A model generated the notes under the pieces. It was not told the DNA's origin, did no database searches, and saw only the letters and a list, made by a program, of their open reading frames with translations. Shown piece after piece: positions 1-18,556 of a DNA stretch of 18,556 nucleotides. How positions within the stretch are numbered: the stretch's first letter is position 1; every line of letters begins with the position of its first letter. The stretch is from Cyanophora paradoxa CCMP329 (lineage: Eukaryota > Plantae > Glaucophyta), in assembly GCA_004431415.1 (NCBI GenBank), contig QPMI01000635.1, positions 1 through 18,556 on the forward strand. Direction: 5' to 3'. A program made the position numbers and the translations under genes.

Positions 1-2271
1 TCCGAAAAAGCGATTCGCACTGCTGTACGATGTTTTCATCTCAAGCCAAATGGGTTGCCCAAGTGCGTCCCAAATGGCCTGAAGATATACCATAAAATTG
101 ATACGAATAAAAGGAGACGAGCATTGTGAATGAAGACTCGTGGATTCTTTTCGTCGCGCCTTCCGAGGAAAGAGAAACCTGAGCGTGGTTGGGCGTTTTG
201 CAATGGAAACTGAATGGAAATCTGAACTGAATGGTGAATGCAAATCCGAACCATGCGTGATGGCCACGCAATCAACGCCCACAGGAAGCGCAGTGTCGTA
301 GCTGTTTTCTCGGAGCTTCGCGAAGAGTGCAAGAAGAGCTTCACGCTGCCGACACGGATTTCATCAAAAAAAATGAATCCGGTCATAAGGACATGAAGAA
401 AGCGAACAGCCATCGCGGATGACTGGTGTCTGCGGCTCTGATATTCAACGGTCCCAATCAGAAGCGCACTGAAGCCCCAGCGTTGCCTTGAAGTCTACAG
501 GGACTTGTGGACGGCCGCCGAAGATCGTGTTCGAGACGTCTGATTGTTTTTTGTCATGCGCACGTATGTTGGTCATGTTTTGATCATGTGCGTGTGTAAT
601 TCGAAAAACGCACCAAAGACTCTCATGATATCGTCGACAAGAGTCTGTACTTGAAGAGGCCAAAGCTCCTCTGGATCGTTCGCAGGCTGCCTGAGAACCG
701 ATGCTGTTTGTGAGAGCGTAAGTTCTTCAACGTGCGATTGCAAACAGCAATCGAGTTCACCCCACGCATTGGCGTTACTGCGACCGCCCGAAAGGCGGTG
801 CGCAGCGAGACCGCGTATGAGTTCTCCTTCTCCGACCCCTCGCGGTCGGATCCATCGTTTTTGTTCTCATCGTTCTTCTGAAGGATTGCTGTCGTCGATC
901 TGCCGACTGTATTCACGCTCTGATTCTTCAGAATCTGCGCTTCCCATCAGTTTGCGATAGCAATACACAACAGCAGGACCACATTTCGAGCAAGGGAAGC
1001 AGCGTTCGCCAAAAGCGTCATCGGCTTCCACAAAATCAGAGGCGTAACCGGTGAAGAAGAAATTGCAGACACAAAGAAAGACAGCACCTTCAGAGGACCT
1101 CCTTTATCAGCAGTCTGAGGGCAAAGCACCGACCAGATTTTCAGGACCGGGCAGCATCGATATTCGAATGGTGAAACAACGGGAAATCACCTTCAACGAA
1201 GGAACTGCCGCTGGAATATTTTCGCCAGAGACGGTTGCTGCCTGAAAGCAACAGCAACGGCAAAGGTTTCAGCACTCGGGCATCAGCATTCGAACGCTCG
1301 AATTGCTGAAGAACACCGTTTTGAAGCGGCCGCCAGAGGAGTTTCCGGCCTGAACATGTGAGGAGAGCTCTTAGCATCGGCTGTCAAGTCCATAAAGCGC
1401 TGGGATGCATGCACACCGCTGGAACTGGAACGGGTTCTCCGCCTTTGCTTCGGTTTCCACAGTTCGGGACCTTTCCAATAGCTGCACATGTAGTGTAAGC
1501 TGTTATACTAGCGGGGACGAGTAAGACTGCGTACATTCAACGCAAGTATTTCTGGCCAGAGTGCATCTCCTCGCCGCTTCTTGATTTTCTGCCAGAAGAG
1601 CATCAAAATTTGAAGGATCAATATCAACATCGTCTGCCAGCAAGTCACAGGAGCTGTACAGGGAATCAACCTTTCGCAACACAGCTTCGTATTTGCAAAA
1701 TGAATGCGCACGTGATTGAGGCCAAGCGTAGATCGATGTCGCGAACCTCCTGAGCAGCAGCATGAAGCTCTCTTACGCTCTTCATCGCGTCTCCGAGAAC
1801 AGGCGGAATGACAATTTTGCTCGATATCGGTAACACTTCGTTGGCTTCTTCGACTGCAGCTAGAAAAGCTCGTTCGACGTTAAAAAACCTGATTGGAACC
1901 ACGCCCGTTGGTCTAATTGCGACGATTGCATAGAAGGGAACCTAACGTGGGCGCACGTTGTCGTATCATAGTTCATGTGCACGGCCGGAGGTTCTGCACG
2001 TCCACAATCTCTGTGGAGCTAATGAAACGATTGCAACAGCGGCATATCCACAGCGTACGCGTACACATAGACCTTGTGGAGCTCATTGAACAACGCAGTC
2101 CTCCACTTGAAGACATTTGCTTTTCGTGCTACGATTACTGCGCAGGCTTGGTACCGCGGAAAAGCGCACCATAGTACAAGCATGCGCACCATTTGCACCG
2201 CTAGCTTCCGCTGGGGTCGCCGGTAACGCATGCACGCCACTAGTGCTCACTGGCGGCCGCGGGCTGGCCAT
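1..2271 (-). CDS. Multi-exon hypothetical protein, 3'-truncated by the window edge
   Basis: ATG at 2271 (MASPRPPVSTSG...). Regularly spaced GT..AG introns on the minus strand join protein-like exons: VIVARKANVFKWRTALFNELHKVYV, FFNVERAFLAAVEEANEVLP..., SCDLLADDVDIDPSNFDALLAENQE, PANDPEELWPLQVQTLVDDIMRVF. No family recognised, and several frameshifts are needed. Confidence 0.6.
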
Positions 2272-2451
2272 TGGGGCAGTCAACTCTGCGAACAGCGCTA
2301 AGTGACATTCTGTTGCTGTCTCATTGCTGCCTAGGAGCGCATCTCATCGCCTAGGTGCGCATCTCATCGCGTCGCTGTACCGGGCTTCGGAAAACTCCGA
2401 TCGCACTACAGCAAGACTAAGCACACTCAGAAGAGCTCAAGATGCTTACGG
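2272..2451. promoter_or_regulatory. Putative bidirectional promoter containing a 20-bp tandem repeat
   Basis: A 180-bp gap between divergent ATGs (2271 minus, 2452 plus). CTAGGAGCGCATCTCATCGC (2331-2350) is followed by CTAGGTGCGCATCTCATCGC (2351-2370), 19/20 identical. Confidence 0.5.
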
Positions 2452-5400
2452 ATGGTCGAGATGCTCCACGCCGATGTTTTCAAACTGCGCCGTGTACCCC
2501 CCGGGGGGGGAAGAACCTGGAGCAGCGGTGCGAACCACGCCATGCAGCGGTCAGAGCGACTGCGGTGCGAATGTCAGAAGTGTCAAGGCAAGTTAGTGCG
2601 TCCTGAGGTTTTCAATGCACATCAACTGCTAGCGCACACCGGATTCAGTAGCAGCGATCGGCAAGTCGAGTGCCCTTGCTCGCGCTGCAATGGAAAGCGC
2701 GTCTCGTCTTGGGTGCAAAGGATACATTTGCACCTAGACAAATATGGATCCAGTCTAGTAGAGCAAGCTGCCCGGAGAGCTCCTGTAAGCGATTTCGTTC
2801 CTTTCGTAGCCGAAGTTCTTGACGTACCGATCCCGACAATTTCGGTTCGAGCGGCACTAAGAAGACGACGATTAGCAGCCCCGGCAGCACTTCAAGGCAA
2901 CGAGCGACAAACAGATTCCAATTCGAAGCGCAAACGTGTCAACAATAAAGCCGCTCGTATGCTGCGAAGGCTGGGTAGATATACTGATCGTATTGGTCCT
3001 CAAGAAAACGGCAATGAACCTGGACATGAATCCAATATCGTCGATGGCATCGATGGCGATGATCATGCTCATGAGGCTTTCGACGACCCAGCCGCAGAGG
3101 AAGGCCAAGCGGACGACATACGTGCAGACCCAGCTAGGGCGGATCAAGTGGATTATGGCCTAGAGTCGGATCAGGACGCAGCGCTCGACGGCTCAGATGA
3201 TGAATGCACTACCAACAGGCAGAATTTTTATTCTGAGCCTCTTTTTGAGGGCTGTAAAGTGTCGGTGCGTGCTGGAGCATTCAATACATTGCTTGATATT
3301 GGCTGTATTGGCTTTTTAACTGTTCTCTAGCGCATGGATTACATCACTTTTTGCCTCGCATTGAAGAAACGCTTTACACAAGCACCTGTTGAGATGTTTG
3401 CATCAATCAACGCGGCTGTGTCTCTCATCATTGAGGGCCAACAAACTGCAACGAGGCAGCTCGGGTCTTGGAAGAGAATGATTAGAGAAATCCAAGAATT
3501 CGTAGCGGTAAATAATCAACCACTTTCAATTTTCGTGTTCGAAACGTTAACATTTCCCTGCTCAGCCTTCCATCACTTTCAGGACATGTGGGTATAAAGA
3601 GACAAAGCACAAGGTGGCGATTTGCAAGACAGTCTGGATCGAAGACGGAACTGTTCCTCCAAATACAGTCTGCGAGTGTGGCCATTCAACCTATGCCGAT
3701 GGTGTGGTGGGCTTCTTTTTTGATCCGACCCGGAGTTTTCAGCAGCTACTGAACAGTCCTTCGTATTATCCCGGTTCCAGTGCGCTTGATTTCGATTCTG
3801 TCGGTGCGGCCACGGCTGATTCAAATTTACACAACGGCGTCCAGTTACGGCGTTCGAGCAATACAGATTGGGGGCGATCGTGTTCCAGATTACTATTTGC
3901 GGTCGCAAGAATCCGAAACCCAACATCTCACTGGCGACTTTGTTCAATCAAGACTTTTCTCTTCTCTTCACGAGGAGGGCTGTGTGCGAATTTCGGACGG
4001 TCTTGGAGTTGTGTGCGCATACTCTACAGATTCCGCAGTGACGCACAGCTGGTCATTTCCACACCTACAGCTTATTCTGAAAACTGGACTCTAATGTCGT
4101 GTTTCTAGGTCCCACGGCGGCTCTTTCACCCCTGTGTTTGTGATACCTATGTCTGCGCATCCTAATTGGCGGTGCGTGATCATTATCTCGCTTTCCGCTT
4201 TTTCGCCACTTGTCTCACCCCGTTTCGCTCAGAACAGCAATGCAACGCCTTGTTTTTCTCATGGATGGGAAGCCGAGAAACTTCGATGGAATGTTCCGCG
4301 TATTCCTTACACCGTGGCTTGTTGCCAACCAGCCGCCGCCCCAGGAGTCCCCGCTCCCGAAAGCCAAGGGTTTGCATGCCTTATAATCTGTCTCTTTCTT
4401 TCAATCATTCAATACCGTTGAGCAGAGTGGGGTTTTGCAATCCTCTCACCGGCAAAACTGACAAAGCATATTTCACAATGGCTCTCAATATCGATGACCT
4501 CCCCGGATGCGCAACGGCATTTATGATAAGTTCGCGTAACGCATCCTTGCGCGGCTTTGTATTCCGGGACAGAAACCTAAACTTTCTGCCAGCGTCGCAC
4601 AGTGGCGAGCACGGCCATCCGCTTCGGAAGGTGGATTTCTGGAAGCGCAGAGCAAAACCGCCGGGAAAAACATGTTTCAAGCACACGATCTCCCGCTCAA
4701 ACACTGGATGCGGGAGTTGTGCGTACTGACCAAGGATCATGATAGACCCCCATCTGCCCGAACGGACTACTGCATGGTGCTCGAGCCGACGGACTGAAAC
4801 GTTCCCACTGCAGCTGTTCTGACACCCTTCGGTACAGCGAGCCGACGGACATGCTGTAGAGATCCAACGCCAAAGATGGTTTCGGAAAGAGATTACGCAA
4901 CAGCTTTTGTTCAATTTGTGAAAACGAAAACCTTCGGTAAAACCTTTTAGAATGGATATAATGAACATCCTTCGAACGCGCCGTCCATTGAATTGTCTCT
5001 GACCAGGCGTTCAAGCTTGCCGACTTTAGCGGAATGGCCACACTTTCGGCTCGGCCCCCTATGCGACTTCAGCTGGAGAGCGACTGGGAGTTCCTGCGGC
5101 ATGGCGAGCTGAATTTCGACATGGGTGTTGAACCGTTCAGGGGCGGCATACTGACGAATTCCACCTCGTCAAAAACCGTCTGGCGGATGTCTTCAACTAT
5201 CTTCGCGGCAACGCGAATAATGGTGATAAGCTCAGTCCTACCTCGATTCAGTGTGTCGTTGCATCTTCCAACTTCCATTCGTGGTTGATTTGCAACGTAC
5301 AACACTAACTTAATTACTTTTCGTCAATGCGAAGGTTAAGCATCAACATGGATGTTCTTGTCCTTTACAGGGCGCCAAGCGAAGCGAAATACGCTGCGCA

Positions 5401-7538
5401 GAGCAAAAGATGGAAAAGGATCGGCGACTTTTCGAAGCAGCTCTCCGAAATGGCAAGCCTCCTCCACGCCAGCCAGTCGACCTTGTCGCGGAACTCGAAG
5501 ATAACGCGCCGTTTGCCTGGGAAGCCACTGAACGGCTGTACGATGCTATCGAGCGTGTTGCAAGGCGCGCACGATATCCGCACTTTTCAGGGAACAACGG
5601 TAAGAATTAAATTCGCCAGACCCAATTTAAGTGAAGTTCGCAATTACAATCGAGAAGAGCGAACTTTGATGTTTATAATTAGACTAGCAGAGTAACATGT
5701 GTGCAGATGGACGAACCGTCGTTTTTACGGACTGGACGAAACTTTCAAAAGTTCGCTATTGCAGACGTGGCAGGCGACATTCTTCGCATGTGTCTTGATG
5801 CGGATATGGATAAACAGAATTGCCTCTATCGATCCTCGTAATCAATCAACTGACGTCCTGCACGGCATTGGATCGAAGGTAACGTTGAGAAAGCAAAGGC
5901 TCCGACACGTCCGTGACGTTGTAACAGATTGTTTATCCGGACTTCTTGCTTGAACTCCGCAAACTAGCAGTTCTTACAAGGGGTGCCGAACGTCACTACG
6001 TACCCGTGCCGTTCTGGACAATGTATGCAGCTCTCGTTGTTGATGCGTGCGCGAACCATTGGCTGTAGCTTGCCTGCAATCGGCTTAAATGTGCGAAGAG
6101 TGGACGGATGCATCGAGCTGGGGCCGGCGCCAGCAGTTTCTTCCCGTGGAACGGAGCGGGGCGGTCACAATGTGAAAGTTACTGCAGGATCGGGGCACAA
6201 TATCTCTGATAACGAGTGCGGCCCGACGAACGCAGGCAAGTTGTGAAAATATCTATTGCAATGCATATTGAATTTCGGTATTGGAGACGTTTGAACGGAT
6301 TTTGTTTGCAGAAATGGGAGCCCTTGCCGTCCTGCAGCATGCAACAAGCGAGTTCTTGAACAAATTCCACACCTTTTGACACGGAAAAGCGGTGCCATTC
6401 GGAAGGCAAACGTGGCTACAGCTACGATATTCACACAGCTGGCGTCGAATACAGTAAGAAAACCAACCAGAGCTGGGGTTCATTCTTGAAGGAAGGTTCG
6501 AAATTCGAATTCGCAATTGCCGCGCCAGCTGCAGATCTAGGTCTAGATCTGCCACATTGATGACAAACTCGCATTAATTCTGCACAGTGATGACAATCAC
6601 GATGAAGAGTACGGTGGCTTAATCTCTTCGTTTGCGAGCGGAGGAGCTGTTCGGAAATCCCCCGTATCTGGCCGTTTTCTTCGACCTCTACGTTGACGAG
6701 CGAGAGCGATTCATAGAGACTAAAGGCACCTGGTTCGAACCATCCGGATATCGATCCGCCCCTTGTTTGTTTCTTCGTGATCATGATCAGCATGCGCACC
6801 AGGCCGAGCTGGGAATACACGATAGAACCTGTATTGCCGGAGGCTGGGCCTGGCGTCGATGGATCCGCACTTCTCCAGCATGCCTCGAGAATGGATTGGC
6901 GTCCCACTCGAAAGGGAACTATGTATCCTTGCTTTTACGCCAACCACCACCTGTTCATTCCAGCGAACTCTCAACCGACAAGCACGACAGCTCATTATGT
7001 CCTTTATCGCGATGGTTCCCCGACGGCAGCTCTGCGACGAGGGGGGCCATCCTACCCTATCATTCCCCTCGGGCGAATGGGTTACCTCAGCGCCGAGGAG
7101 ATCCAAGCGCATCCTGACCGGCGAGAGCCGGTCCGGCGCATGCTCGTGCCAGAGGCCTTTCGAGTTCGCCCACGCAAAGGCACCGGGGGTGCGTTTCGCA
7201 TCATTCGAGCTGCGGTCTACCCCTTCTCAGCTTGCTCGTTTATGCCCAACTTGAACTGCGACCGAATCGACATCACCAAAGAGGACCCTCTCTGTCGTTG
7301 GTGTGGCTGACACCATCGAGCCTTGGCGCCTGATGCCTCTCCCGACCACACATCGTCGCAATTCGAGCGTGTGCTCCCTAACCCAACAATCGATCACCTT
7401 ATCAGAGCTCAGCAGTGCTTCCCAGATAAGGGAGAGGTTAGGAACTTTCTTGGCGAGCGGCTGCCGTTCACGTCCCTGCGTAAACGTAGCCTACAGCTGC
7501 ATGCGCAAGACGTATTTATGCAAATAATTAGCTTGTAA
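2452..7538 (+). CDS. CACTA/EnSpm superfamily DDE transposase (Tnp2/TnpD-like), multi-exon
   Basis: Spliced motifs are colinear with CACTA TnpD. CPCSRCNG..HL..YG matches the transposase-associated Zn motif. PLFEGCKVS|RMDYITFCLALK spans intron 3265-3330. VCECGHSTY..FFDPTRSFQQLL follows intron 3508-3565. YSTDSA..SFTPVFVIPMSAHPNWR holds D1 at ~4029 (intron 4052-4108) and resembles LSTDG..SxWPV..NLPPxxR. YFTMALNIDDLPG holds D2 at ~4495 and resembles LLWTINDFPA. AHDLPLKHWMR resembles HRRFLPxxHPxR. RHTDEFHLVKN resembles RHxLDVMHIEKN. Also APFAW..RYPH and FKSSLLQTW. ELGPAPAVSSRGTERGGHNVK holds the catalytic E at ~6153 and resembles GP..FERxxGxLK. Several homopolymer indel corrections are needed. Structure beyond ~6500 and the stop codon are uncertain. 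Confidence 0.88.
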
Positions 7539-7566
7539 CAAATTTATTATTTCTTGTGGCTGCGGC

Positions 7567-7818
7567 ATGCAGCCGCAGAGCCTCGGAGGCCCGGGCCTTT
7601 CGGATCCGGTCCTGGTGATAAAGCACACAATCATGATTCTTCTGATCATGAGCCCTTCGAGCTCGTGATCATGAAGCCTCAGGCTCGGTACCAGGGCGAC
7701 TCGGCGAGCTCGACGCATGGCCAGTCATGATCAAAAAGCTCGTGTCTCGTAGCAAGCAACCCTCCGGGCCCAGCCTAGAAGACACACGGCGCTGATGATG
7801 GGAGCTCGAGCCTCGAGA
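7567..7818 (+). repeat. ~250-bp direct repeat, copy 1 (rich in palindromic hexamers)
   Basis: ATGCAGCCGCAGAGCCTCGG...GGGAGCTCGAGCCTCGAGA aligns end to end with 7992-8240, with one substitution and a few 1-bp indels. Confidence 0.95.
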
Positions 7819-7991
7819 AAGCCTCAGGCCTCTTTGAGGCCCAGGGGACATGCGCTGGTCATAGACTCTAGATCTGAGAGCCTCGGAGCTCGAGCTTGTG
7901 ATCATGTGCATCGGATCATGACGCCGCTGAGCCTCATGGGCTCAGGCCTCGGCAGCTCCCTTTGAGGCTCCGGATCCCTGATCATGACTTA

Positions 7992-8240
7992 ATGCAGCCG
8001 CAGAGCCTCGGAGGCCCGGGCCTTTCGGATCCGGTCCTGGTGATAAAGCACACAATCATGATTCTTCTGATCATGAGCCCATCGAGCTCGTGATCATGAA
8101 GCCTCAGGCCTCGGTACCAGGGCGACTCGGCGAGCTCGCGCATGGCAGTCATGATCAAAAGCTCGTGTCTCGTAGCAAGCAACCCTCCGGGCCAGCCTAG
8201 AAGACACACGGCGCTGATGATGGGAGCTCGAGCCTCGAGA
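7992..8240 (+). repeat. ~250-bp direct repeat, copy 2
   Basis: Near-identical to 7567-7818. The 7819-7991 spacer is built from the same short words (GAGCTC, GATCATGA, GAGCCTC). Confidence 0.95.
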
Positions 8241-8338
8241 TCCGCATGATGGGCCGGAGCCACTAGGACGATTAATATTTAATTATGCCTCTGTCCCCTC
8301 ATGATCAGCGAGGACGGCTTATGCACATGATGATCATG

Positions 8339-8365
8339 ACGTGCGTGCATGCGCGTGCACGTGTG
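8339..8365. other. 27-nt perfect purine-pyrimidine alternation (potential Z-DNA)
   Basis: ACGTGCGTGCATGCGCGTGCACGTGTG is strictly RY-alternating. Confidence 0.6.
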
Positions 8366-8438
8366 AATGCCTGCAGGCGCAGTTGCTTCCTCATCAATTC
8401 AAATCTATTACTTCCTAATTCCTCAAAAAGCTACTCTC

Positions 8439-11400
8439 CTAATTCCTAATAAAGCTACATTCTCCCCTACACATAGATGCGATTCGGCTTTTGCAATTGG
8501 GTCGGCGGCACTCGGGGCATTTGCATATTTGCTCTTGGCTGCTGTCGTCGAGGGGTTCCGACTGGAGGCCCGGAGGTCGTGAATTCGAAGAATGTGGGAA
8601 TGTGACTACGTCAAGCACGTACCGAATACTTCCACGTGAGGGGATCACCTGGCTCAATGTCTAACAAAGCATAAACCCAAACGATATCTGTCACCAACCA
8701 TCACTGGTCGAAGCTCGACGTTCGGTTTGCAGCTGTGATTCTGCAGCACTGGCCAGCCCCGGCTGCCATATCCAGCAACCTGCACGCGCAGGCCTGTTCA
8801 AGCAAGTAGGAAGGGTACTTGTAATTGGAAGAAAGAACGGAATAACCAGTGAGAAGATGTTTCAGTCGAACATGCGTTGTGAGCCGCGTAGCTTTCGACC
8901 GGGAACTTGCTCTGGACCTGTTGCATTGTTCCCCAGAAGCTCTCCCAAAACATGCCTGCTCGTATTCTGGGGGCCCACTTCGGGTTCCGGATGCCAACAC
9001 CACAGTCATTCTGCTCGTCGAAAACTTCCACGGAAATACTTGAAGACTGACCCACGATCTTGAAGTTCCGATTTCCGCAATCGGTAGTGCATAAGAGCAG
9101 TTGAAAGGAGTGCACTGGTATTCGGAAACAATGTTGTGGCAAGCAGGAGAATCGCGGCAAAGAAGCAGACGTGACCCCGTGGCCCGAAGCAGACGCAGCA
9201 ATCATGGCTCAGTTGTTCTCTCACTGCCGCGCGGAACAGCGCGGTCAAAAATCGAACAGCGCTAGAACAACGCTCACGAACCGGCTTTTGGAATATGTGG
9301 AAACTGGAAGTTAGAATTGTAAGCTTGATAACCTCATTCATCCGCTTTTTTGCCAGCTCCGATCCATCATGTGAAATTCGGGCTGTTTGGAGGGCGAGTA
9401 TGATAAAGTTTCTGAAACGTGTTCCAGGATGTGCGGAGAGGACTCAATTCTGGAGTTCTGAGCTCGGACTTCCGAGATGTACCTGCAAACGAGCACATGA
9501 AAAGGAAGAATACGAAGCTGAACCCTCCCGAACCTGAGTTCAAGTTCTTTGATGTGCTCTTCAGGGGAAGCCGTGATATCGTGATTGATGAAACGCGCCA
9601 TAAGGTGCAGAGTAAGTTTCTCCTTGAATTCTTCGAGAGAAATCGGATACGTGTACGAAGCCTGCTTCTCGTATTCTTCCTCATGCAGCTGCCCTGTTGG
9701 GTACCACATCTGCAACGTCGGAGGCCTACGGCGCCAGACGCGTCGAGAATGTCGTTCAGACATTCAGACAACTGGAGTAAGAAGTCGCCTGCATGGACTC
9801 GCACTGCGTTAAGCCTTCAGTACCGGTAAATTTCAGCAATGCGAGCAATTGAAATGCCGACCGACAATGTGAACGCGTCCTGAGCAGTTGACGTGGAGCA
9901 GGGAAATAAATCGATTCGACAGACACGGTCCTCAAGTCGTGTTTTCCGGCAACCAGCGGTCACATCTCGCATGCTCGAAAGCATTCACCAGCGATGACAG
10001 CCGAGTTTTGAAAGTAGGTCCAAGAGAATCGTAAAAAACCATTCCGGCCCATCCGAGAACTCAAAAGCACGTGAGCAGTCCTTTGCGATGAAAAAAATAA
10101 GCGAAACGATATTGTTATACGTTAAAAGAAATAGATTACCAGTGGAATGCCTCTTCCAATACGAAGGCGACCCCGGGCGCTGGTTTGCGGTGCCGTTCCA
10201 GAGATGCAATCTTGGAGACATGCTCTCAACGACATTTCCATGGAATTCTAGGGGTCGGATTCAAGTTGACGCATCAACTGTTCGCACCAACAATCTCCAA
10301 ACTGTTTATAATTATGCTCGAAATTAGGCAATGGAAGACTTTGAGATGATCATTACGCACAATTCTGCATGTGGATGTCATTGAAAGGGTCACCCAGCGT
10401 GTGCTCTGGAAGAAAAGCGAAGCCTCCCGTGAATTCCGCAACTCCGGCACGTCAGCAAGCGGACGCTCAAGTCGTTCTGGTTCGAGGCGAAACACGTGAA
10501 ATGCGTCCACGTTGTACGTTGAGTACAATCCTTGAGGGACAGTTCGTGCCGAAGCCTTGCCTGCCTTGAAACTGAATCTGAATTCCCGTCGATCACTTGT
10601 TGGCGCAGCTGAGAATTCCCAGGTAATGAAACGACCAAGAAGTCTGCAGTGATGCACATCGCGTTCCGACCATGGATGATGGGAAAGTATCTTTTGGAAA
10701 AACAGGATGTCAAAACAGCTTTGCTTAGAGTAAAAAAGACAGCAACTTGGACCCACCAGGAAGCCCGAGGCGCACTGAACCGCAAGACGGACGAAGATTG
10801 ATTCGCGAATATCGTGTTCCATCACTTGATCACTAATAACAGCGTGCGTAATTCTGCATTCATCACATTAAACAGAGAAGTAGGTGGAATCCATATGTAA
10901 GAAAAAAGGGAGCTCACCCCAGACTTCCGAAGTCGGCAAGCCCGGCTTCGCCGATAACCAGCTCTGTGCGTTGTGTATACGCCTCGAGCAACGCAATCAC
11001 TTCTGGGAATTCGCTGAACATAACGGATCGGCACTGCTGAAGAAAGGATATCTGAAGTTTTTTGAAGCTTGCGAGAAACATCTGCAAGATTTCGAATCCG
11101 ACGAGTTTCTTCAGACGAAATGGAAGCTGCCTCTCCATGAGAGCAAATATGAGGCTGAGCTGCCTCAGAACGCCACCTGAACCTGCTCCTATGTCCGCAA
11201 TCACAACCTCTGGCGAGTCCAGCTCCAAAGTCGAGTTCCCTTCCGGCAAGACCCCCCGGAAATGAACTCTGCTATCGTTTTGATGTCAACGAGGCCGAGC
11301 TCGCCATAATTCAAAGATCGAGAGAGCGATCCAATGGATGAGGCTTTCATGTTGTCTTGTTTCTTCAGAATGCTGGGCAGACTCTCCTTCCGGATATGAA

Positions 11401-14097
11401 AACGCATATCGTACACCGCTCCAGCTTCATCCGCATAGCGACCATTTGTGACAACCTCAGCCGCGAGTTGCCAGCGCCGTGGAAAGTTGTCACATCGACT
11501 GAATTCAATCATGCCACGGGAGCAAGAAACGACAAGCGGGGCGACTTCGTTTTCTCGCTTCTTGCGCTTCACTGGCTTGTCGCCTTCGAATCACTCAGAA
11601 TTAAAAAAACCAGAAACATTTAAGACGCTCGAACCGACATACGGAGCTGAAGCTAAAGATTGGAGGACTCTCGCTGCAGCCTGACGCCTGCCACCGCTGC
11701 TGGCCGTGGTGCGCGATGCACTAGCAACAGATGCGTCTGAGGAATTGGGATCGTCGTTCGCGCCGTATGGCTTCTGGCTGAAGTCTATTGCTGAGTCGTT
11801 TCCGGCTGAACGCGTTCTTTTAATTCCCTGGCCAGGCTCTGGTCCGAAATCAACGCCTGACACGCGGGGTATCAGTTCAGAGATGGAAACATGAGCCATG
11901 ATTCATGCATATGCTCACCGGGTATATTCTGAGTAAGGTAAGCCCAAATTTGATGCGTGTTCGGAAGTCGACCAGACGGTGTGCGAGCGGAAGGGTCCTT
12001 CGAATTCTTGATAGCGTACCGGTACCACGACACCCTCCAGTTGCTCAACTGTGGATGCGTTTTAGGCCGATCCGTACTGGGCTGCTGCGGTAGGTCGCTG
12101 CGCATGCTCTTCCGGCGCCGTTTGACGGTGACGGGCCGATGTGCAGCTAAAGGGCGTGGGAACTCATGATCATGATCACGATTCTCATGGCAGGTTGGCG
12201 AATTCCGTGCCGGAGAGCTGTTGGAAGAACTGCTTCCGCCTGGAAGCTGCAGCTGCTCTTCCGCCTGGAATAAGCGCTCGCTTTCGGACTCATCGCTCGC
12301 TGACTGTTCACCGTACGAAAAATCGGTCTTGGTACGATCAAGAGACCGCAAGTGAAGTTTACGAAGTTCCTCGGAATCGCCAGGGAGTCTGATCTTCAGA
12401 GCTAGAAGCCAGTCGCTGGCGACCGTCTCGGCATACTTCAATAGGGCACGCGAGCTCGATGTCGAAAGCTTCTTTACCCAATCCAGAAGTTCGGCGGGGT
12501 TTGCCGGATGGCCGACATTCACAGAAGGAAAATTCGCGTTTTCCAGCATATCGAGAACGACATTGGCGGCTTCAGCAGTGATGTCTGATATGACCTGCAA
12601 AGATGATGGGAATGACAACAGGTGTGCAGAGAAGGTTGAAGATTACCTTCCTGTGGAGGGCGTCGTCTGTTTTCACACCGAAGGATGCGAAGAAATCTGT
12701 TGGCAGCTGAGGAGCATCGTCGTCGCCGTCACTCGATGAGCTCGAGCTCGAGGAAGCGTACGGTGCTGCATTCGATTAAAAGCGCGGATGAAGCCCGAGC
12801 ACACGGGCAGATGCAGCTTTTCTTTCGCACATGAGAGCGGTGGAGAGAATGCCCTGTTTCCTCGAGCTGCTGCCCGAACCAAGACTGGCGGCGTCCTCGA
12901 GAACGCGGTGCGACGGAGGGCTGCGAGGATAAGAAGAAGCCCGCACAGTCAAGTTTTAGAATGGCCGCTCACTCTCAGATGGTCAGATTTCACGTGAAGG
13001 ACTTGGGGTCCCAATGCTGCGCGAAGCTCAGATCTAGATTGCTGGAGGACGCTCAAATCGCTGGTTTCTAAGAACGGACGGAGCTCGTGGCACCAACTGG
13101 GCCCGGAGGCAGAAAGGTGTGCGCGCGATCCTGGAGCCGGAGGCGGGGGGAGCCGGATAGCGGGGGGAGCCGGATATAAGAAGCAATAAGAGTAAGAAGT
13201 AAGAGTAAGAAGCTGTAAGCTAAGAAGCTGCGTAGAGAAGAAGCTCATTGAAGGGAAGAAGCTTTTGAAGTAAAAGCTCTAGACACAGCAATTGCAAGCA
13301 GGCAGCCAACCACGTGCACGGACCGAGCTCGTTACGGCACTGCGATGGAAGCTCAGATTTCAAAGCGAGGCTATGGCGTGAGGTTGCCTTGAGTAAGAAA
13401 GGCTTCCCGCTCTGGTTTCTGGTCCTGTACATGTGGCCACGCGTGTGTGAAGGGCGTGCATAGCGTATCCACATGTACATGCACGTACGCGGCCGGTACG
13501 CCGCGCCTGACTGGATTCTTGCAGCCTCCCATTGTTTGAGGACTTCTCGAAACCGCTCGGAGCACCTGGATCATCGGAGCCGGCCCGAGCAGTGCGCTTG
13601 GCGCTTCTTGTAGGTTTCGAGCGGAGCGTCCGGTGGGGCATTCATGTTCCTTTTGGGAAGCCGCAAGACCAGAGCGATCGGCTTCAGAGCTCGCACATGC
13701 GCTTCTGCGAACAAACCTCCTCATTCGAACTCTGGAAGGCGCCCAAGCGCGTTGGAGAGGTCAGAGATGTGGCATGCGCACACGCCGCAATCGCGCTACG
13801 CATGCTAGTTGCGATAGAAGCACGCCGGGAGAGCTGGCCGGCGCGAGAGGCACGGCCGGCGCCGAGAGAGCTGCGGGTGGTTGTGTAGGCAAGCTCTGTT
13901 CTTGTGTACGGACCTGTTTTGCTCTTAGCATTTGTTCTACCGTCTTGACGACGTCGACCGGCAGACGAACTCTGTACCCCCCTTGCGCGCCGTGCCTCGG
14001 CCGTGCCACCGTAGCGCGCAGCGGCTGCCTTTGGCGGCGCGATGAACAGCTTCAGAGAGCCTTTCTTTGACTCTGACTGCTGAGTCGTCACTGGCAT
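8439..14097 (-). CDS. Multidomain chromatin modifier: low-complexity N-terminus + DOT1-like methyltransferase + Ulp1/C48-like peptidase + AWS-SET-postSET methyltransferase
   Basis: ATG at 14097 (accATG; MPVTTQQSESKK...) and stop TAG at 8439-8441. A continuous chain of exons and short introns runs between them (e.g. 13131-13323, 10081-10139, 8562-8622), with no intergenic-sized gap between domains. The DOT1 C-terminus and the peptidase N-terminus lie in the same exon. The N-terminal exons and the single-gene status depend on indel correction. Confidence 0.72.
8480..9205 (-). other. AWS-like Cys cluster + SET + post-SET domain (architecture like the Set2/NSD/ASH1 family)
   Basis: DCCVC..CRDSPACHNIVSEYQCTPFNCSY..DCGNRNFK resembles AWS CxC..CxN..EC..C..CxNxxF. 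EVFDEQNDCGVGIR..IRAGMF supplies the GxG motif. LQNHSCKPNVE has NHSC at 8740-8729. GDRYRLG(fs)YALLDIEPGDPLTWKY resembles RI.FFA.RDI..GEELTYDY. CKCPECRRPNCKSRI is post-SET-like (8524-8480). Confidence 0.9.
9580..10400 (-). other. Ulp1/SENP-like (peptidase C48) domain
   Basis: Motifs occur in order. PFNDIHMQN|FWRLL resembles WLNDxIINFYMxLL (~10385). VAFVLEEAFHW|TAHVL has His at 10144-10142, with Trp split by intron 10081-10139. FYDSLG lies at 10033-10019. PAPRQ precedes C(G)VHAGDF (Cys 9803-9801, needs a +1 correction). LEEFKEKLTLHLM gives a terminal helix. Several frameshifts are needed. Confidence 0.62.
10490..11320 (-). other. DOT1-like class I SAM-dependent methyltransferase domain
   Basis: SLNYGEL (YGE at 11308-11300) precedes a frameshift at the C6 run 11252-11257. 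VIADIGAGSGGVLRQLS is motif I and resembles FVDLGSGVGQVVLQVA. LVGFEI is post-I. Then TELVIGE, G|ITHAVISDQVM, CASGFL|ILSHHPW (resembles GxRIVSSKPF) and STYNVDAFHVFRL (final strand). Confidence 0.82.
13143..13290. repeat. Intronic tandem/low-complexity repeats
   Basis: GCGGGGGGAGCCGGATA x2 (13143-13176, perfect 17-mer) followed by degenerate TAAGAAG/GAAGCT units, inside the predicted 193-nt minus-strand intron 13131-13323. Confidence 0.8.
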
Positions 14098-14154
14098 GGT
14101 ACTTCTTTAGCTTTCCCGGGAACCGCGATACCGCGAACTGCAAAGAGTGCGGGG

Positions 14155-17105
14155 ATGATTGCTGACGTTTTCGCGTGCCGCAGAGCCCCTGCCCCCAGAT
14201 ATGCGGCGACTGGATACGACGGTATGTAAACGCCACAGAAACGACGTGCCAAACAGTTCTAGACTGCCATACGCAGAACCCACATGCTGCCCTTCTTGAA
14301 TTACAGGCATCGAAGTCGACTATGGCAGCCTTGTCGGCAGCGTCAGCCGCCATCAATGCTACGCTTAGGAACAGGCGCAGCAGAGCTCGAGCAAGTGCAG
14401 TTTGGCGTTCTTACTCGTTTTACTCGCAGAGCAATCATCGCAACGGACCCCGTGAACTTCGCTGACCCAAACAAGCAAGTGTGCCTTCTTCTGATAGGCC
14501 TAGTTCAGCTTCACGGTCGTCCTCTAGCCTTGCGTGCTTTCCGGTGCGAATGCGCGGCGTTGCCTTCATCGCTGCCTGCCGGCTCTGTGTCTGAAGCTGT
14601 CGATCTTTCTGATCTGGCAGGGCGTGTGCCGACCTGCCAGACGGAGAAGTCGAGAGCTCGAATCTGATTTACGTGTACTGCATATGATTGCAATTCGCAC
14701 ATGCACGTCCCAGATGGCGCTGGCATCATTCAGTGGTGATCAAATCGAAAGAGCGCACGTATTCAACTGGTCTCTTCTTTTCAGTCAGATCTTCGCGTTC
14801 TTCGCCAAGGCCGGATGCTCTGGATTCACAATGGAGTCGGTTCATCGAAGCACGAGATAGCGATTGTGCTGGGGCTTGGGGATCTTCGTCATTGTCAGTG
14901 CTCTCGCAAGTTGAAGATGTTCTCCGTCCGAAATGTAAGTAGTAGTGTTTGCTTGGAGTGGAATGATTGATTCTTTTTCAGTTTATCTTCGTGCTCTTTC
15001 GGATCCTATGGGATAGGGTCGTCTTCTATGGTGCATGATAACTGGCCATCTTCAGAATTGCAAGAATCTCGCGATGTACCTTTCTCTATCGGTCTGTCAC
15101 ATTACAATGTAGTTCAATCTGTAGCATACAATCAGTTTGGCGCACAGTGGACATCAATTCTCACCGGAAGACATCGATGATAAACTGAGTCAGCTCTGCG
15201 ACGGTTTCAAGTTTGTGACGCTCTCGCATGCGGGAGCGCGTCTGATCTGGAGTCAGTCGTCAATGAGATAGCGTGCCTGGTACGCAGTCAATTCTCTTGT
15301 GCAATGTTGGATCCGTTTCTTCTGATTTCGTCACAGCTTGCACGCACTGCAAAGCTAAAATGCCCTTTGGGGCGTATGTGTGGACTAAAGGCTGCTGGGG
15401 AACGTCAAGGGGCGCTCTCGGGGCCGAATGTTCGAAATCGAAGCGGTCGCCAGCACCAGCAAATGCCATCAATGGACGGTAGACTGTGTTAACCTTTATT
15501 TTGTCCGTCGACTTCAACTCTTGACCGATCAGGAAACCCACCTTGTTATCCCGTGTGTGTACGATTAAACTTCCTCGCCGACCAGCAAATGCCCGGAAAC
15601 AATCAAGCACACTTCGCCATTCTCAAATCGGAAGGTATTCATTAACATGTGCGCCTGATTCCGCTGAAGTGGTCCCGACCTTCGACTTAGATAATAGAAG
15701 AACGCCGAACGAGCGCGAAATCCATCACTGTACAGGAGCTTGAGAGCTCGCATCCCTTGCAAAGCTTCCTATCAAGGTCAGTTGGAATCACGGTCCGAGC
15801 AGCATTCTGGTTCTGTTTGGAACCGAATCTTTTAGTTATCATCATGGAGGCAGTTCAAAGGATTCTTTTGACGGAATCCGGTTCATTTCGAAGGAATTTC
15901 TTATCGAGTTATCGAAGCTTAGCAAGGAATTCGGAATCGCACTGTTGGTCGACGAATCAATAACAGGTGAGCAGCTGTACATGTGTGCGCGCATAACAGG
16001 GAGAGTGACAATGTCCGCACTTCACGCGCAGCCATGTGTCGTACAGCGAAGTCTTTCTTCGCATTTGAACAGTTTGTGAGCACTGTGCAGAACTCGAATA
16101 CGAGACGAATTCTTGTGCACGGCGCTGCTACGGGAAAGACGATGCTTCCGTCGTGTATTCTCGTGCGGCGCTCAGCATTGTTCGCTCTCGCGAGGCATTG
16201 AGAGCATCAGGCGTGATGCAGGTAAAAGAAATGCCTGGTGGAGTAGATCCATGGAAGCGGACGTTCAAGCATTCCAGCGGAAGAATTTGCAAATGATGTT
16301 TTTGCCGGTACGATTTCACACTTGTAGTTTTCTGAGAAACACTTTATTGCTCTCTGCAGAGTATATAACTGTGCAGCCGTATCGTGACGCTTTGATCAGG
16401 ACATCTTGTGTTTTGGATAAAGTTCGTGTTTGTGTCCTAATCGTTACCACTCTCATGCATATCCTCTAGTTTGCAAAATGCGCACTCGATGTCCAGACTT
16501 CTTCCAAAGCCTTGCAGCTCTGTCGACCAAAATTTCCATCTCTTTGAGGACTTCGAATTTGGCCTGCGAGCTTCGCTTTGGAGGCGACGGAAATCTTCTA
16601 TCCGTCCGGCCGCTTGGCTAGCAGCTCGGAAGTCTCCCGCTACTCGGATTGCGATCTATCCTACAGTACATCCGTAAATGACATCAAATACGAGGCGGGG
16701 CAAGCAGTTTCGCATGCCGGTACGATTATAGTGTATTGCTTTCATAATTTTCTGCGAAAGCGCATTTGTTTGCTTTCATTAATTTTTGCGCCTGTGCAGA
16801 TTCCTGTTCGCAGTGCCGACTGTTGTCGCAGACAATTTGCCCCAGTTCATTACACGCGCATTGCCCAATGCGAAGTAGCATCTTATCATCGTACATTTTT
16901 CCAATCGATTGCAATTCCAGAGCTGGTGCAGCGATTTGCACGTGCCAAGCGTACAAAACTATCGCTTTAGATGGTAAAGTCTATTTTTTAAGAAGAACGA
17001 GCGCGCTTGGGCTTGACCGCACTTGGGCTTGCAACAGGGTCCTCGAATGCCCTACGGCGAAACCAGCGCGCGCTGTCAATGCATCGTCTGTCAAGAGTAA
17101 GCTAA
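14155..17105 (+). CDS. Multi-exon protein: unknown N-terminus + class III PLP aminotransferase-like domain + C-terminal PHD-like zinc finger
   Basis: Plus-strand introns throughout. Motifs occur in order: MITGHLQN; FVTLSHAGA(fs)SDLESVVNEIA (resembles SGSEAxExA); KGCWGTSRGALGA (15387-15425, resembles FHGRTxGALS); VIIMEAVQ (resembles VIVEPVQ); FLIELSKLSKEFGIALLVDESIT|AMCRTAKSFFAFEQF (intron 15967-16031, resembles FLxxLRxLCxxxGxLLIxDEVxTGFGRTGxxFAFE); ATGKTM (Lys at 16136); ITVQPYRDALIRTSCVLDK; TRIAIYPT. Start (14155 or 14201) and stop are tentative. Confidence 0.75.
16800..16950 (+). other. PHD-like Cys/His zinc finger
   Basis: With two indel corrections the exon reads DSCSQCRLL..HCPQCEVASYHRTFFPIDC..AICTC, i.e. 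CxxC..CxxC..YH..C..CxC. Spacing deviates from a canonical PHD. Confidence 0.4.
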
Positions 17106-17172
17106 TCTTCGAACCGTACGCGTGGAGTGTGTCGTGATTCCGAACATACACAGCCAACAAGATCCGATCTCA

Positions 17173-18213
17173 TCAATGACTCCAGGCCCCAGCGAGCGGC
17201 TCTCTCGCAAGGCTTAGCGATGCTGCTCTCGAAATCGTCCAAGTAATGCGAAAATCGTACATGGCCTGCGAATGGGTGTGTGGGATGTTAGTTAAAAGAT
17301 GGGGATCGAACAAAGATCGGGCAACATTACCCGAACAAGCATATTGTGATTGTTCATATACGCCTCGGCGGCGGGCATCCATTGTGTATCCTCGATTATT
17401 TGCATAGTTTTCTCCCACTGAAGATAGCGAAGCACTGTGAGTATAATGGCGCGCGCGGGTGCCCATGGCCAGCAAAATTGCGCACATCGTGCACAATGCC
17501 TGCCACGTTGAGGCAGCTTCCTAGAGAGCCCTCCCTTGTCTTCCGCATCAGGTAATCCATGGCATCGACACGGGCGCCACCTCGGGAACGAGGAGTAATA
17601 CGGCGCTAGTGTGTGTGCAGCTTGCTTCAGAAGTACCTCGGCCATTAGACGGTTTCGGTACAAATGCTGAACGAGATTCTGAGTAAATTAACAGGCCAGG
17701 CTCTGATATTGATCATCTTTGTCTTACCTTCAACATGCATTGGTCCTGCTTCGGAAGGCGGTTGCAAGAGCGAGCTTCAGTGTACGGATGACGTACATAT
17801 TCCTGAATCGTGTGCACAGAAGGCACAGGATCAAGCATCCAACTCTTGAGAATTCCGGTGTCATGATGAGGAAATAGTGTTCTGAAAGTGTCACCGAGGC
17901 GTTTGTGGTGACGATTGAATATGTGTCGATACGGATGCCCTGGGGCAACAATTGGCTCGAGGCGCATGTTTCCACGGAAACCGCCAACTTGGTAAGGAAC
18001 CCAGCCATCACGCGCATGCGACGCGTACGAGCCTTTCCAGTCTTTGCGTCGAGGAAGCAGTCAAGACTATTTTTGAGTTGTGTGCACGGACGCCGACAGC
18101 AGGAGCTGGGACGGGCAAGGTCGCCGGATAGTCTTGTGAAAAGAACGAAACTTGATGCCGGGCGTGTTCTTCCAAGTTGCCTTCCACTGGGAGCCAGAAA
18201 TTAAGTTTACCAT
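17173..18213 (-). CDS. Multi-exon hypothetical protein
   Basis: Minus-strand donors (GTACGT, GTAAGA, GTAATG) join exons PIVAPGHPYRHIFNRHHKRLGDTFRTLFPHHDTGILKSW.., LYRNRLMAEVLLKQAAH.., VLRYLQWEKTMQIIEDTQWMPAAEAYMNNHNMLVR and AMYDFRITW..WSH*. The start is either 17967 or the ATG at 18213. No family recognised. Confidence 0.55.
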
Positions 18214-18402
18214 ATGGTAAACTTAGGGTGTGGTAAAGTTGTGCTGTTTTGCGTTACACCACTGTAAAGTCACCAGGGTAAAGTCGCCGGGGTAAAGTCA
18301 GGGTGGTAAAGTTGTGAAAAGCGGGGTAAAGACGTCGGTGTAAACTCGCCGAGGTAAAGTTGGCGAGGTAAAGACGTCGGGGTAAACTCGCCGAGGTAAT
18401 GT
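18202..18402. repeat. Subterminal-type repeat array, core (G/T)GTAAA(G/C)T, led by a 24-bp perfect palindrome
   Basis: Palindrome TAAGTTTACCATATGGTAAACTTA (18202-18225). Direct copies at 18216, 18232, 18263, 18277, 18291, 18305, 18325, 18339, 18353, 18367, 18381 and 18395, mostly with a 14-bp period. A 42-bp higher-order duplication pairs 18325-18366 with 18367-18408. Confidence 0.92.
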
Positions 18403-18556
18403 TGGTTTCGGTGCAGCGGTTCACTTTTTTACGTTTTTTTTGCTTTTTTTATTTTTTCTGTAAAAGCTATCTATAGCAGCCCATCTTCAAGCGATACTGC
18501 GCGCGAGCTCTATCCTAGAGCTAGCTAATCGGTTTTGATGAATGCTTCGTATTCCT

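What the first reader, a model, noticed from the sequence alone, without database searches (positions are those of the whole stretch)
1..18413. Giant CACTA-like transposon carrying its own chromatin-modification toolkit
Seen: a CACTA DDE transposase, a DOT1-Ulp1-SET fusion, an aminotransferase with a PHD-like finger, two unknown genes and a subterminal-type array, all within 18 kb. Divergent gene pairs are only ~60-180 bp apart. Known: CACTA elements usually encode TnpD plus TnpA and sometimes a Ulp1 protease. Transposon-encoded anti-silencing exists (Spm TnpA, VANDAL VANC), and fungal KDZ elements carry TET/JBP. Inference: this is a >18-kb element family that rewrites its own chromatin to escape silencing. 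I know of no described CACTA with this cargo set.
Basis: partly seen in the sequence, partly recalled or inferred. Interest (0 to 1): 0.92.

Follow-up and report, generated by a model that had tools for sequence, protein, structure and literature searches.

The report
Large CACTA-like transposon with chromatin cargo
This stretch of a microbial eukaryote's genome holds a very divergent jumping-gene enzyme (CACTA type) next to a gene that seems to fuse two kinds of histone methyltransferase, probably inside one large transposon, but neither the element's boundaries nor any anti-silencing role could be shown.

Summary
The parts are mostly real; the single element and its function are unproven. 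The DNA comes from an intron-rich eukaryote (GT-AG introns of about 52-66 nt) and appears to carry long-read indel errors: two copies of a 250-bp repeat differ by 5 one-base indels and 1 substitution.

Supported: a CACTA/EnSpm-like transposase (Pfam Transpos_assoc, E=4.8e-5); a gene with a DOT1-like SAM-binding fold followed by an ASH1/NSD/Set2-type SET domain; a class-III-aminotransferase-like core whose PLP lysine may be lost; two orphan genes; and a 14-bp-period array next to a CAC-type end at 18413.

Not supported: the Ulp1 and PHD domains. The C(2)C and H(3-4)H zinc motifs typical of these transposases are missing at their usual positions.

No relative of any gene was found in any collection, and the left end and target-site duplication are outside the window, so co-mobility could not be tested. 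A palindrome-rich 0.8-kb block at 7540-8360 could be an internal boundary. Large multi-gene EnSpm elements and transposon-borne SET or TET genes are already described; I found no report of a DOT1-like plus SET fusion as cargo. One element is about 55% likely; self-protection by histone methylation about 30%.

The parts
1..2300 (-). Gene B, orphan, multi-exon, runs off the left edge; cysteine clusters near 1450-1540 and 980-1090; start codon uncertain
   Evidence: minus strand wins 68% of windows; no family hit
2452..7310 (+). Gene A, CACTA/EnSpm-like DDE transposase, about 10 or more exons, several frame breaks
2647..2748 (+). Transposase-associated domain (PF13963)
   Evidence: E=4.8e-5, 23.9 bits against a cut-off of 27.7
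4020..6159 (+). Putative catalytic core: first D 4020-4034, second D 4490-4507, DxxH 5150-5164, GP-x9-ER with the putative E at 6115-6159; C(2)C and H(3-4)H not at their usual register
   Evidence: register taken from my own knowledge of plant CACTA transposases
7540..8360 (.). Palindrome-rich non-coding block with a 250-bp direct duplication (7567-7818 and 7992-8240); possible nested insertion or internal boundary
   Evidence: DNA folding z=-4.2
8439..12790 (-). Gene C, multidomain: low-complexity N-terminus, DOT1-like methyltransferase, unassigned middle, AWS-like, SET, post-SET-like; a first exon may lie upstream of a candidate intron at 12921-12972
10829..11311 (-). Class I (Rossmann) methyltransferase, DOT1-like: YGE 11297-11311, DxGxGxG 11175-11195, GxE 11088-11102, strand-4 region 10829-10849 lacking the DOT1 NN pair and any NPPY-type motif
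   Evidence: DOT1 motif pattern from own knowledge
9685..9912 (-).
   Evidence: unconfirmed
8490..9200 (-). AWS-like (9068-9141), SET (NHSCxPN 8720-8740; GxxLTxxY-type motif 8626-8658) and post-SET-like cysteines (8508-8528)
13345..17137 (+). Gene D, multi-exon; cysteine clusters at 14139, 15339 and 16805-16867 (not a confirmed PHD); 5' extent uncertain
15744..16198 (+). Class-III aminotransferase-like core across intron 15967-16031; Asp of the DE motif kept, PLP lysine register holds Gly or Ala with a Lys 4-5 residues later
17102..18200 (-). Gene E, orphan, about 3 exons, 3' end meets that of gene D
   Evidence: no relative
18204..18402 (.). Subterminal-type array, 12 direct and 1 inverted GGTAAAGT-like units, mostly 14-bp period
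18404..18413 (-). Candidate right terminus reading CACCGAAACC inwards; no partner in the window
   Evidence: CAC..GTG termini of fungal EnSpm

Best explanation
The window is the right-hand 18.4 kb of one large CACTA/EnSpm-like cut-and-paste transposon in an intron-rich microbial eukaryote; its left end lies beyond position 1. Gene A would cut at the termini (shown: gene and motifs; inferred: activity). An element-encoded DNA-binding protein, possibly B or E, would bind the 14-bp array as TnpA does in Spm (inferred by analogy only). Gene C is captured chromatin cargo that joins a DOT1-like and an ASH1/NSD/Set2-like methyltransferase domain; the most likely role is to put transcription-linked marks (H3K36, H3K79) on the element's own nucleosomes so that it stays expressed (inferred; about half likely if the element is one unit and the domains are active). 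Gene D is a degenerate aminotransferase-fold protein with cysteine clusters, more likely a scaffold or binder than an enzyme. The frame breaks are mostly sequencing errors, so the copy may be intact.
For: Transposase domain and motif order. The only short-period terminal-type array in the window is at the far right, beyond all four other genes, and is followed by a CAC-type end. Every gene is highly diverged and has no detectable relative in 1.8 to 5.8 billion proteins, and SET, methyltransferase and aminotransferase pieces score far below family cut-offs, unlike conserved host enzymes. One codon model and one splice model fit genes A, C, D and E (16 of 19 pieces right in leave-one-out). Indel-dominated differences between the duplicated copies. 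Precedent for size and cargo.
Against: No left end, TSD, second copy or empty site. GTG occurs in 17% of random 15-nt windows, so the CAC end is weak alone. The 7540-8360 block could end a smaller B+A element. C(2)C and H(3-4)H are missing at their usual register. A short AAAAGCT motif is shared by inner spacers and the supposed outer flank. Shared codon and splice habits are expected of any genes of one genome. DOT1 identity rests on motifs recalled from memory and patterns written after seeing the sequence. No activity or expression data.
Confidence: 0.5

Rival explanations
1. Two adjacent or nested mobile elements: a smaller CACTA-like element (genes B and A) ends in or near the palindrome-rich block at 7540-8360, and genes C-E with the 18.2-18.4 kb array belong to a second, non-autonomous or different DNA transposon.
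For: The block is non-coding, carries two motifs repeated about 7 times each in both orientations and folds strongly, as subterminal regions do (PMC2613891). It sits exactly between the 3' ends of A and C.
Against: Its motifs do not resemble the right-hand array, and no left-type copy of the array or of CACCGAAACC occurs between 7300 and 8440, so a second element would need its left end deleted or elsewhere.
Confidence: 0.22
2. Genes C-E (and B) are fast-evolving host genes in a repeat-rich region; the transposase and the array are separate insertions or remnants beside them.
For: The organism is unknown and may be so distant from sampled genomes that ordinary genes look orphan. Lineage-specific DOT1 expansions with new domain partners occur in hosts (brown algae, PMC13076208). 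Intergenic motifs are shared with the outer flank.
Against: Host Set2/ASH1 and class III aminotransferases are conserved enough to score well against Pfam even in deep lineages (established knowledge); these score E=0.018 and 0.13, though on exon-sized pieces. The array abuts gene E within tens of bases.
Confidence: 0.15
3. One large element, but the cargo is not an anti-silencing toolkit: the methyltransferase domains are inactive readers or decoys, guide insertion to marked chromatin, or are decaying passengers.
For: The DOT1-type NN pair is not seen after strand 4, the aminotransferase lysine register is changed, and the protease motif is incomplete. Chromatin domains in transposons also serve target-site tethering (bioRxiv 10.1101/2021.11.30.470311). 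H3K79 methylation can be repressive.
Against: The SET domain keeps NHSCxPN, the C-terminal Tyr and post-SET cysteines; the breaks are frame slips rather than scattered stop codons, which argues against long decay.
Confidence: 0.25

Closest known systems
CACTA / En-Spm superfamily (CMC or CMCT clade), e.g. maize Spm, soybean Tgmt* (20.5 kb; PMC2613891)
   Same: PF13963 domain at the transposase N-terminus, D-D-DxxH-ER motif order, subterminal array in both orientations, size near 20 kb.
   Different: End reads CACCG, not CACTA; no TnpA/Ptta domain detected; C(2)C and H(3-4)H not found at the usual register; four further genes; very low similarity.
Enlarged En/Spm families of the red alga Chondrus crispus (16-20 kb, 4-5 ORFs; cited in PMC6431247)
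   Same: Same size class and ORF number in the same superfamily.
   Different: Their cargo is not described as chromatin enzymes in the passage read; no sequence comparison was possible.
TET/JBP-carrying fungal EnSpm, ESTA, Plavaka and KDZ elements (PMC12730594)
   Same: CMCT transposon with CAC..GTG ends carrying a chromatin or DNA-modifying enzyme proposed, not proven, to counter silencing.
   Different: Cargo here is histone-methyltransferase-like, with no TET/JBP.
HarbingerS and oomycete MuDR families encoding SET methyltransferases (cited in PMC12730594); SETMAR and other chromatin-TE fusions (10.1101/2021.11.30.470311)
   Same: A SET domain associated with a DNA transposon.
   Different: Other superfamilies; no DOT1-like plus SET fusion or aminotransferase-fold partner reported in what I could read.
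VANDAL/VANC anti-silencing in Arabidopsis
   Same: The proposed logic of self-protection.
   Different: MuDR element, sequence-specific non-enzymatic factor, shown by experiment; nothing VANC-like detected here.

Membership tests
CACTA/EnSpm (CMCT clade) | Tnp2/TnpD-type transposase recognised by family profiles | tested here: inconclusive
   PF13963 E=4.8e-5, below cut-off; no Transposase_21 or DUF4218 hit on exon-sized pieces
CACTA/EnSpm (CMCT clade) | D-D-E triad with a DxxH motif | tested here: inconclusive
   Candidate residues in the right order; assigned by recalled consensus, no reference alignment available; GP-x9-ER alone occurs in 20 of 150 simulations
CACTA/EnSpm (CMCT clade) | [quoted passage not shown] | tested here: not met
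   Neither at the usual register in the frames the codon model favours; CxxC at 4709 lies in a disfavoured frame and at 4908 is unresolved. Caveat: hand-made gene model on error-prone sequence
CACTA/EnSpm (CMCT clade) | 5'-CA..TG-3' termini forming a terminal inverted repeat | tested here: inconclusive
   One end (18404-18413) fits CAC; no partner in the window; weak alone
CACTA/EnSpm (CMCT clade) | Subterminal repeats in direct and inverted orientation | tested here: met
   13 units at 18204-18402, one inverted; 22 matches against 7.8 expected, 0 of 200 shuffles
CACTA/EnSpm (CMCT clade) | [quoted passage not shown] | not testable with these tools
   Left end outside the window; source genome not in any collection
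CACTA/EnSpm (CMCT clade) | Second ORF of TnpA type | tested here: inconclusive
   No Pfam hit for pieces of B, E or the 3' part of A; TnpA proteins diverge fast
DOT1 H3K79 methyltransferase | Class I SAM-binding fold with motif I | tested here: met
   PADLOC mad2 methyltransferase E=1.3e-4 on motif I; ordered motifs in 0 of 150 simulations (patterns written after seeing the sequence)
DOT1 H3K79 methyltransferase | Match to the DOT1 profile (PF08123) or structure, and the conserved Asn after strand 4 | tested here: not met
   No Pfam or PDB hit on pieces; single-sequence folds unusable; Asn pair not seen. Works-like claim rests on the YGE and motif spacing
ASH1/NSD/Set2 SET methyltransferase | AWS, SET (NHSCxPN, GEELxxxY-type motif) and post-SET cysteines in order | tested here: met
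   scores are weak and AWS and post-SET are motif-level only
Ulp1/C48 protease | His-Asp-Cys triad with Q-x5-C and a Peptidase_C48 profile match | tested here: not met
   a His pattern appears only with assumed frame slips
Class III aminotransferase | DE motif and the collinear segment that follows | tested here: met
   E=0.006 with a profile of six E. coli enzymes; next exon ranks 1 of 671
Class III aminotransferase | Schiff-base lysine | tested here: inconclusive
   Best ungapped registers put Gly or Ala there; a Lys lies 4-5 residues later
PHD finger | C4HC3 pattern or PHD profile match | tested here: not met
   No hit on the cysteine-rich pieces

The most novel reading that the evidence does not exclude
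An undescribed lineage of giant CACTA-like transposons whose transposase has lost both halves of the usual zinc site, and which carries an active two-headed H3K79/H3K36 methyltransferase fusion and an aminotransferase-fold pseudoenzyme to keep its own chromatin open.
Probability: 0.25. Interest if true: 0.82.

Novelty: new variant of a known kind. Interest (0 to 1): 0.58.

Why it matters
Transposon-encoded counter-silencing is proven in few systems, and the function of transposon-borne TET and SET genes is still untested (PMC12730594). An element carrying a natural DOT1-like plus SET fusion would give a direct test of whether a transposon can write histone marks on itself, and a CACTA transposase without the zinc site shared with RAG1/Transib would bear on what that site is for. 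If the genes are separate neighbours, what remains is an unusual methyltransferase fusion in a poorly sampled eukaryote.

Tried and rejected
Searches with no result: exact look-up of 20 ORFs and one contig look-up; three homolog searches; DNA patterns from the array, terminus and internal duplication in viral, metagenome and genome contigs; related-locus scans; phage blastn; Rfam and tRNA scans. The one hit of the all-representatives search, P0001, is a bacterial PPC-repeat protein whose score comes from summed repeats and was rejected. Single-sequence AlphaFold models had pLDDT 45 and 37 and their fold matches were meaningless. Caspase and RING hits in PDB were chance. N6-adenine DNA methyltransferase for gene C was considered because of the mad2 hit and rejected: no NPPY/DPPY-type motif follows. 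A sixth gene on the minus strand at 13.3-15.3 kb was considered and not supported: splice signals there are on +. Long decay as the cause of the frame breaks is disfavoured by the 5:1 indel-to-substitution ratio. Human origin is excluded by intron size and CpG observed/expected 1.09. One search's exon test used a wrong coordinate and was redone. Two papers were not held.
Full report
What the window is. The sequence is eukaryotic: GC about 51% with no CpG depletion, no RNA genes, short ORFs and GT-AG introns of mostly 52-66 nt that interrupt recognisable protein motifs. The organism could not be identified; no ORF is on record. It is not human. Five genes can be traced by hand: B (minus, 1 to about 2300, running off the edge), A (plus, about 2452-7310), C (minus, about 12790 to 8439), D (plus, about 13345-17137) and E (minus, about 18200-17102). 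A codon model built on 19 hand-chosen pieces picks the right frame in 16 of 19 leave-one-out tests and gives weak strand support for B and E.

Sequence quality. Many motifs change frame at short base runs (for example near 3868, 4668, 5142, 8950, 9084, 9152). The unbiased evidence is the internal duplication: copies at 7567-7818 and 7992-8240 differ by five single-base indels and one substitution over 253 columns, four of the indels in base runs, and runs of three or more C or G are under-represented. This is the pattern of long-read error, not of evolutionary decay (inference). It means the copy may be intact, and also that all searches had to use short pieces.

Gene A. Exon 1 matches Pfam Transpos_assoc, a domain of En/Spm transposases (E=4.8e-5, below cut-off). 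Downstream, candidate D (4020-4034), D (4490-4507), DxxH (5150-5164) and GP-x9-ER (6115-6159) lie in the order I recall for plant CACTA transposases; no profile confirms the core. Kojima lists C(2)C and H(3-4)H as shared by the whole CMCT clade (PMC12730594). Neither is at its usual register in the frames favoured by a codon model trained without those pieces. Either both halves of the zinc site were lost, which would be coherent, or the hand model is wrong. So A works like a CACTA transposase, but strict membership is not established.

Gene C. The C-terminal part is a SET domain: Pfam E=0.018 on a 47-residue exon, with the best 13 PDB matches all ASH1L, NSD or Set2-type H3K36 enzymes, preceded by an AWS-like cysteine stretch and followed by post-SET-like cysteines. 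The middle has a SAM-binding motif I (PADLOC mad2, E=1.3e-4) preceded by YGE and followed by GxE at DOT1-like spacing; this ordered set and the SET pair each occurred in 0 of 150 simulated sequences, but the patterns were written after seeing the sequence. No DOT1 profile or structure matched and the Asn pair I recall after strand 4 is absent, so 'DOT1-like' is the fair label. The Ulp1 call failed: no profile hit, no motif in one frame, and a loose pattern is common by chance. That both methyltransferase domains are one protein is inferred from contiguous same-strand coding signal, not shown.

Gene D. The exon at 15744-15966 matches class III aminotransferases weakly but consistently. A profile of six E. 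coli enzymes, not chosen by similarity to the window, ranks it first of 667 pieces (E=0.006), and the 13 residues after intron 15967-16031 rank first of 671 possible exon starts against the segment that follows the DE motif. The PLP lysine position holds Gly or Ala in the best registers, with a Lys 4-5 residues later, so catalytic status is open. The cysteine clusters gave no PHD hit. Nothing links this gene to chromatin.

Ends. The array at 18204-18402 is real: 12 direct and one inverted unit, 14-bp period; GGTAAAGT with up to one mismatch has 22 matches against 7.8 expected. It is followed by a sequence reading CACCGAAACC inwards from 18413, with no partner in the window. Fungal EnSpm ends are CAC..GTG, but a GTG falls in 17% of random 15-nt windows. 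Between the 3' ends of A and C lies a 0.8-kb non-coding block with the duplication, two motifs repeated in both orientations and strong folding (z=-4.2).

Relatives. None were found for any gene or terminal sequence. These blanks reflect an unsampled lineage, short queries and length limits; they do not refute anything, and the co-occurrence test remains undone.

How it most likely works. Shown: the genes, their domain resemblances and the array. Inferred: one element of more than 18.4 kb (about 0.55), excised by A, with the array bound by an element protein; gene C depositing H3K36 and H3K79 methylation on the element to keep it transcribed (about 0.3 overall). Rivals are two abutting elements, divergent host genes beside a transposase, and cargo that is inactive or serves targeting; these overlap in part, so the figures are not exclusive. 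H3K79 methylation is repressive in brown algae, where host DOT1 genes have expanded with new domain partners (PMC13076208), so the direction of any effect is not given by the domain name.

Comparison with what is known. En/Spm elements of 16-20 kb with 4-5 ORFs are reported from Chondrus (PMC6431247) and a 20.5-kb CACTA from soybean (PMC2613891). SET genes occur in HarbingerS and MuDR elements and TET genes in fungal EnSpm, with function unvalidated (PMC12730594); chromatin domains recur in transposons across eukaryotes (10.1101/2021.11.30.470311). Ten literature searches found no CACTA with a DOT1-like plus SET fusion or an aminotransferase-fold gene, within a library that lacks Repbase Reports and most subscription journals.

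Verdict. Observation partly confirmed, interpretation partly supported. A new variant of a known kind, with a cargo combination I could not find described. Interest 0.58, down from 0.92, because two domains failed, the boundaries are untested and chromatin cargo in DNA transposons has precedent.

Noticed in passing
window 7540-8360: Non-coding block rich in TCATGA, GAGCTC and GAGCCTC motifs, with a 250-bp direct duplication at 425-bp spacing; could be a nested non-autonomous element, a subterminal region or a local duplication.
   Followed up: partly
window 7567-7818 and 7992-8240: The two copies differ by 5 one-base indels and 1 substitution, which marks the assembly as error-prone; other windows from this contig will have false frameshifts.
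   Followed up: yes
window 4490-4590 and 6000-6046: Both halves of the CMCT zinc site (C(2)C and H(3-4)H) appear to be missing from the transposase at their usual register.
   Followed up: partly
window 16100-16145: The aminotransferase-like protein may lack its PLP lysine and be a pseudoenzyme.
   Followed up: partly
window 1450-1540 (minus): Gene B has a cysteine cluster ending in CGNR, the same tetrapeptide as the AWS-like stretch of gene C; no profile hit.
   Followed up: partly
window 8409-8458, 13133-13290, 18426-18470: Short tandem repeats (24, 17 and 6-13, 9 bp) and a shared AAAAGCT motif in the inner spacers and in the supposed outer flank.
   Followed up: partly
window 2329-2370: A 20-bp tandem pair in the short spacer between divergent genes B and A, a possible shared promoter element.
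   Followed up: no
window 18202-18225: The inner end of the array is a perfect 24-bp palindrome formed by one inverted and one direct unit.
   Followed up: partly
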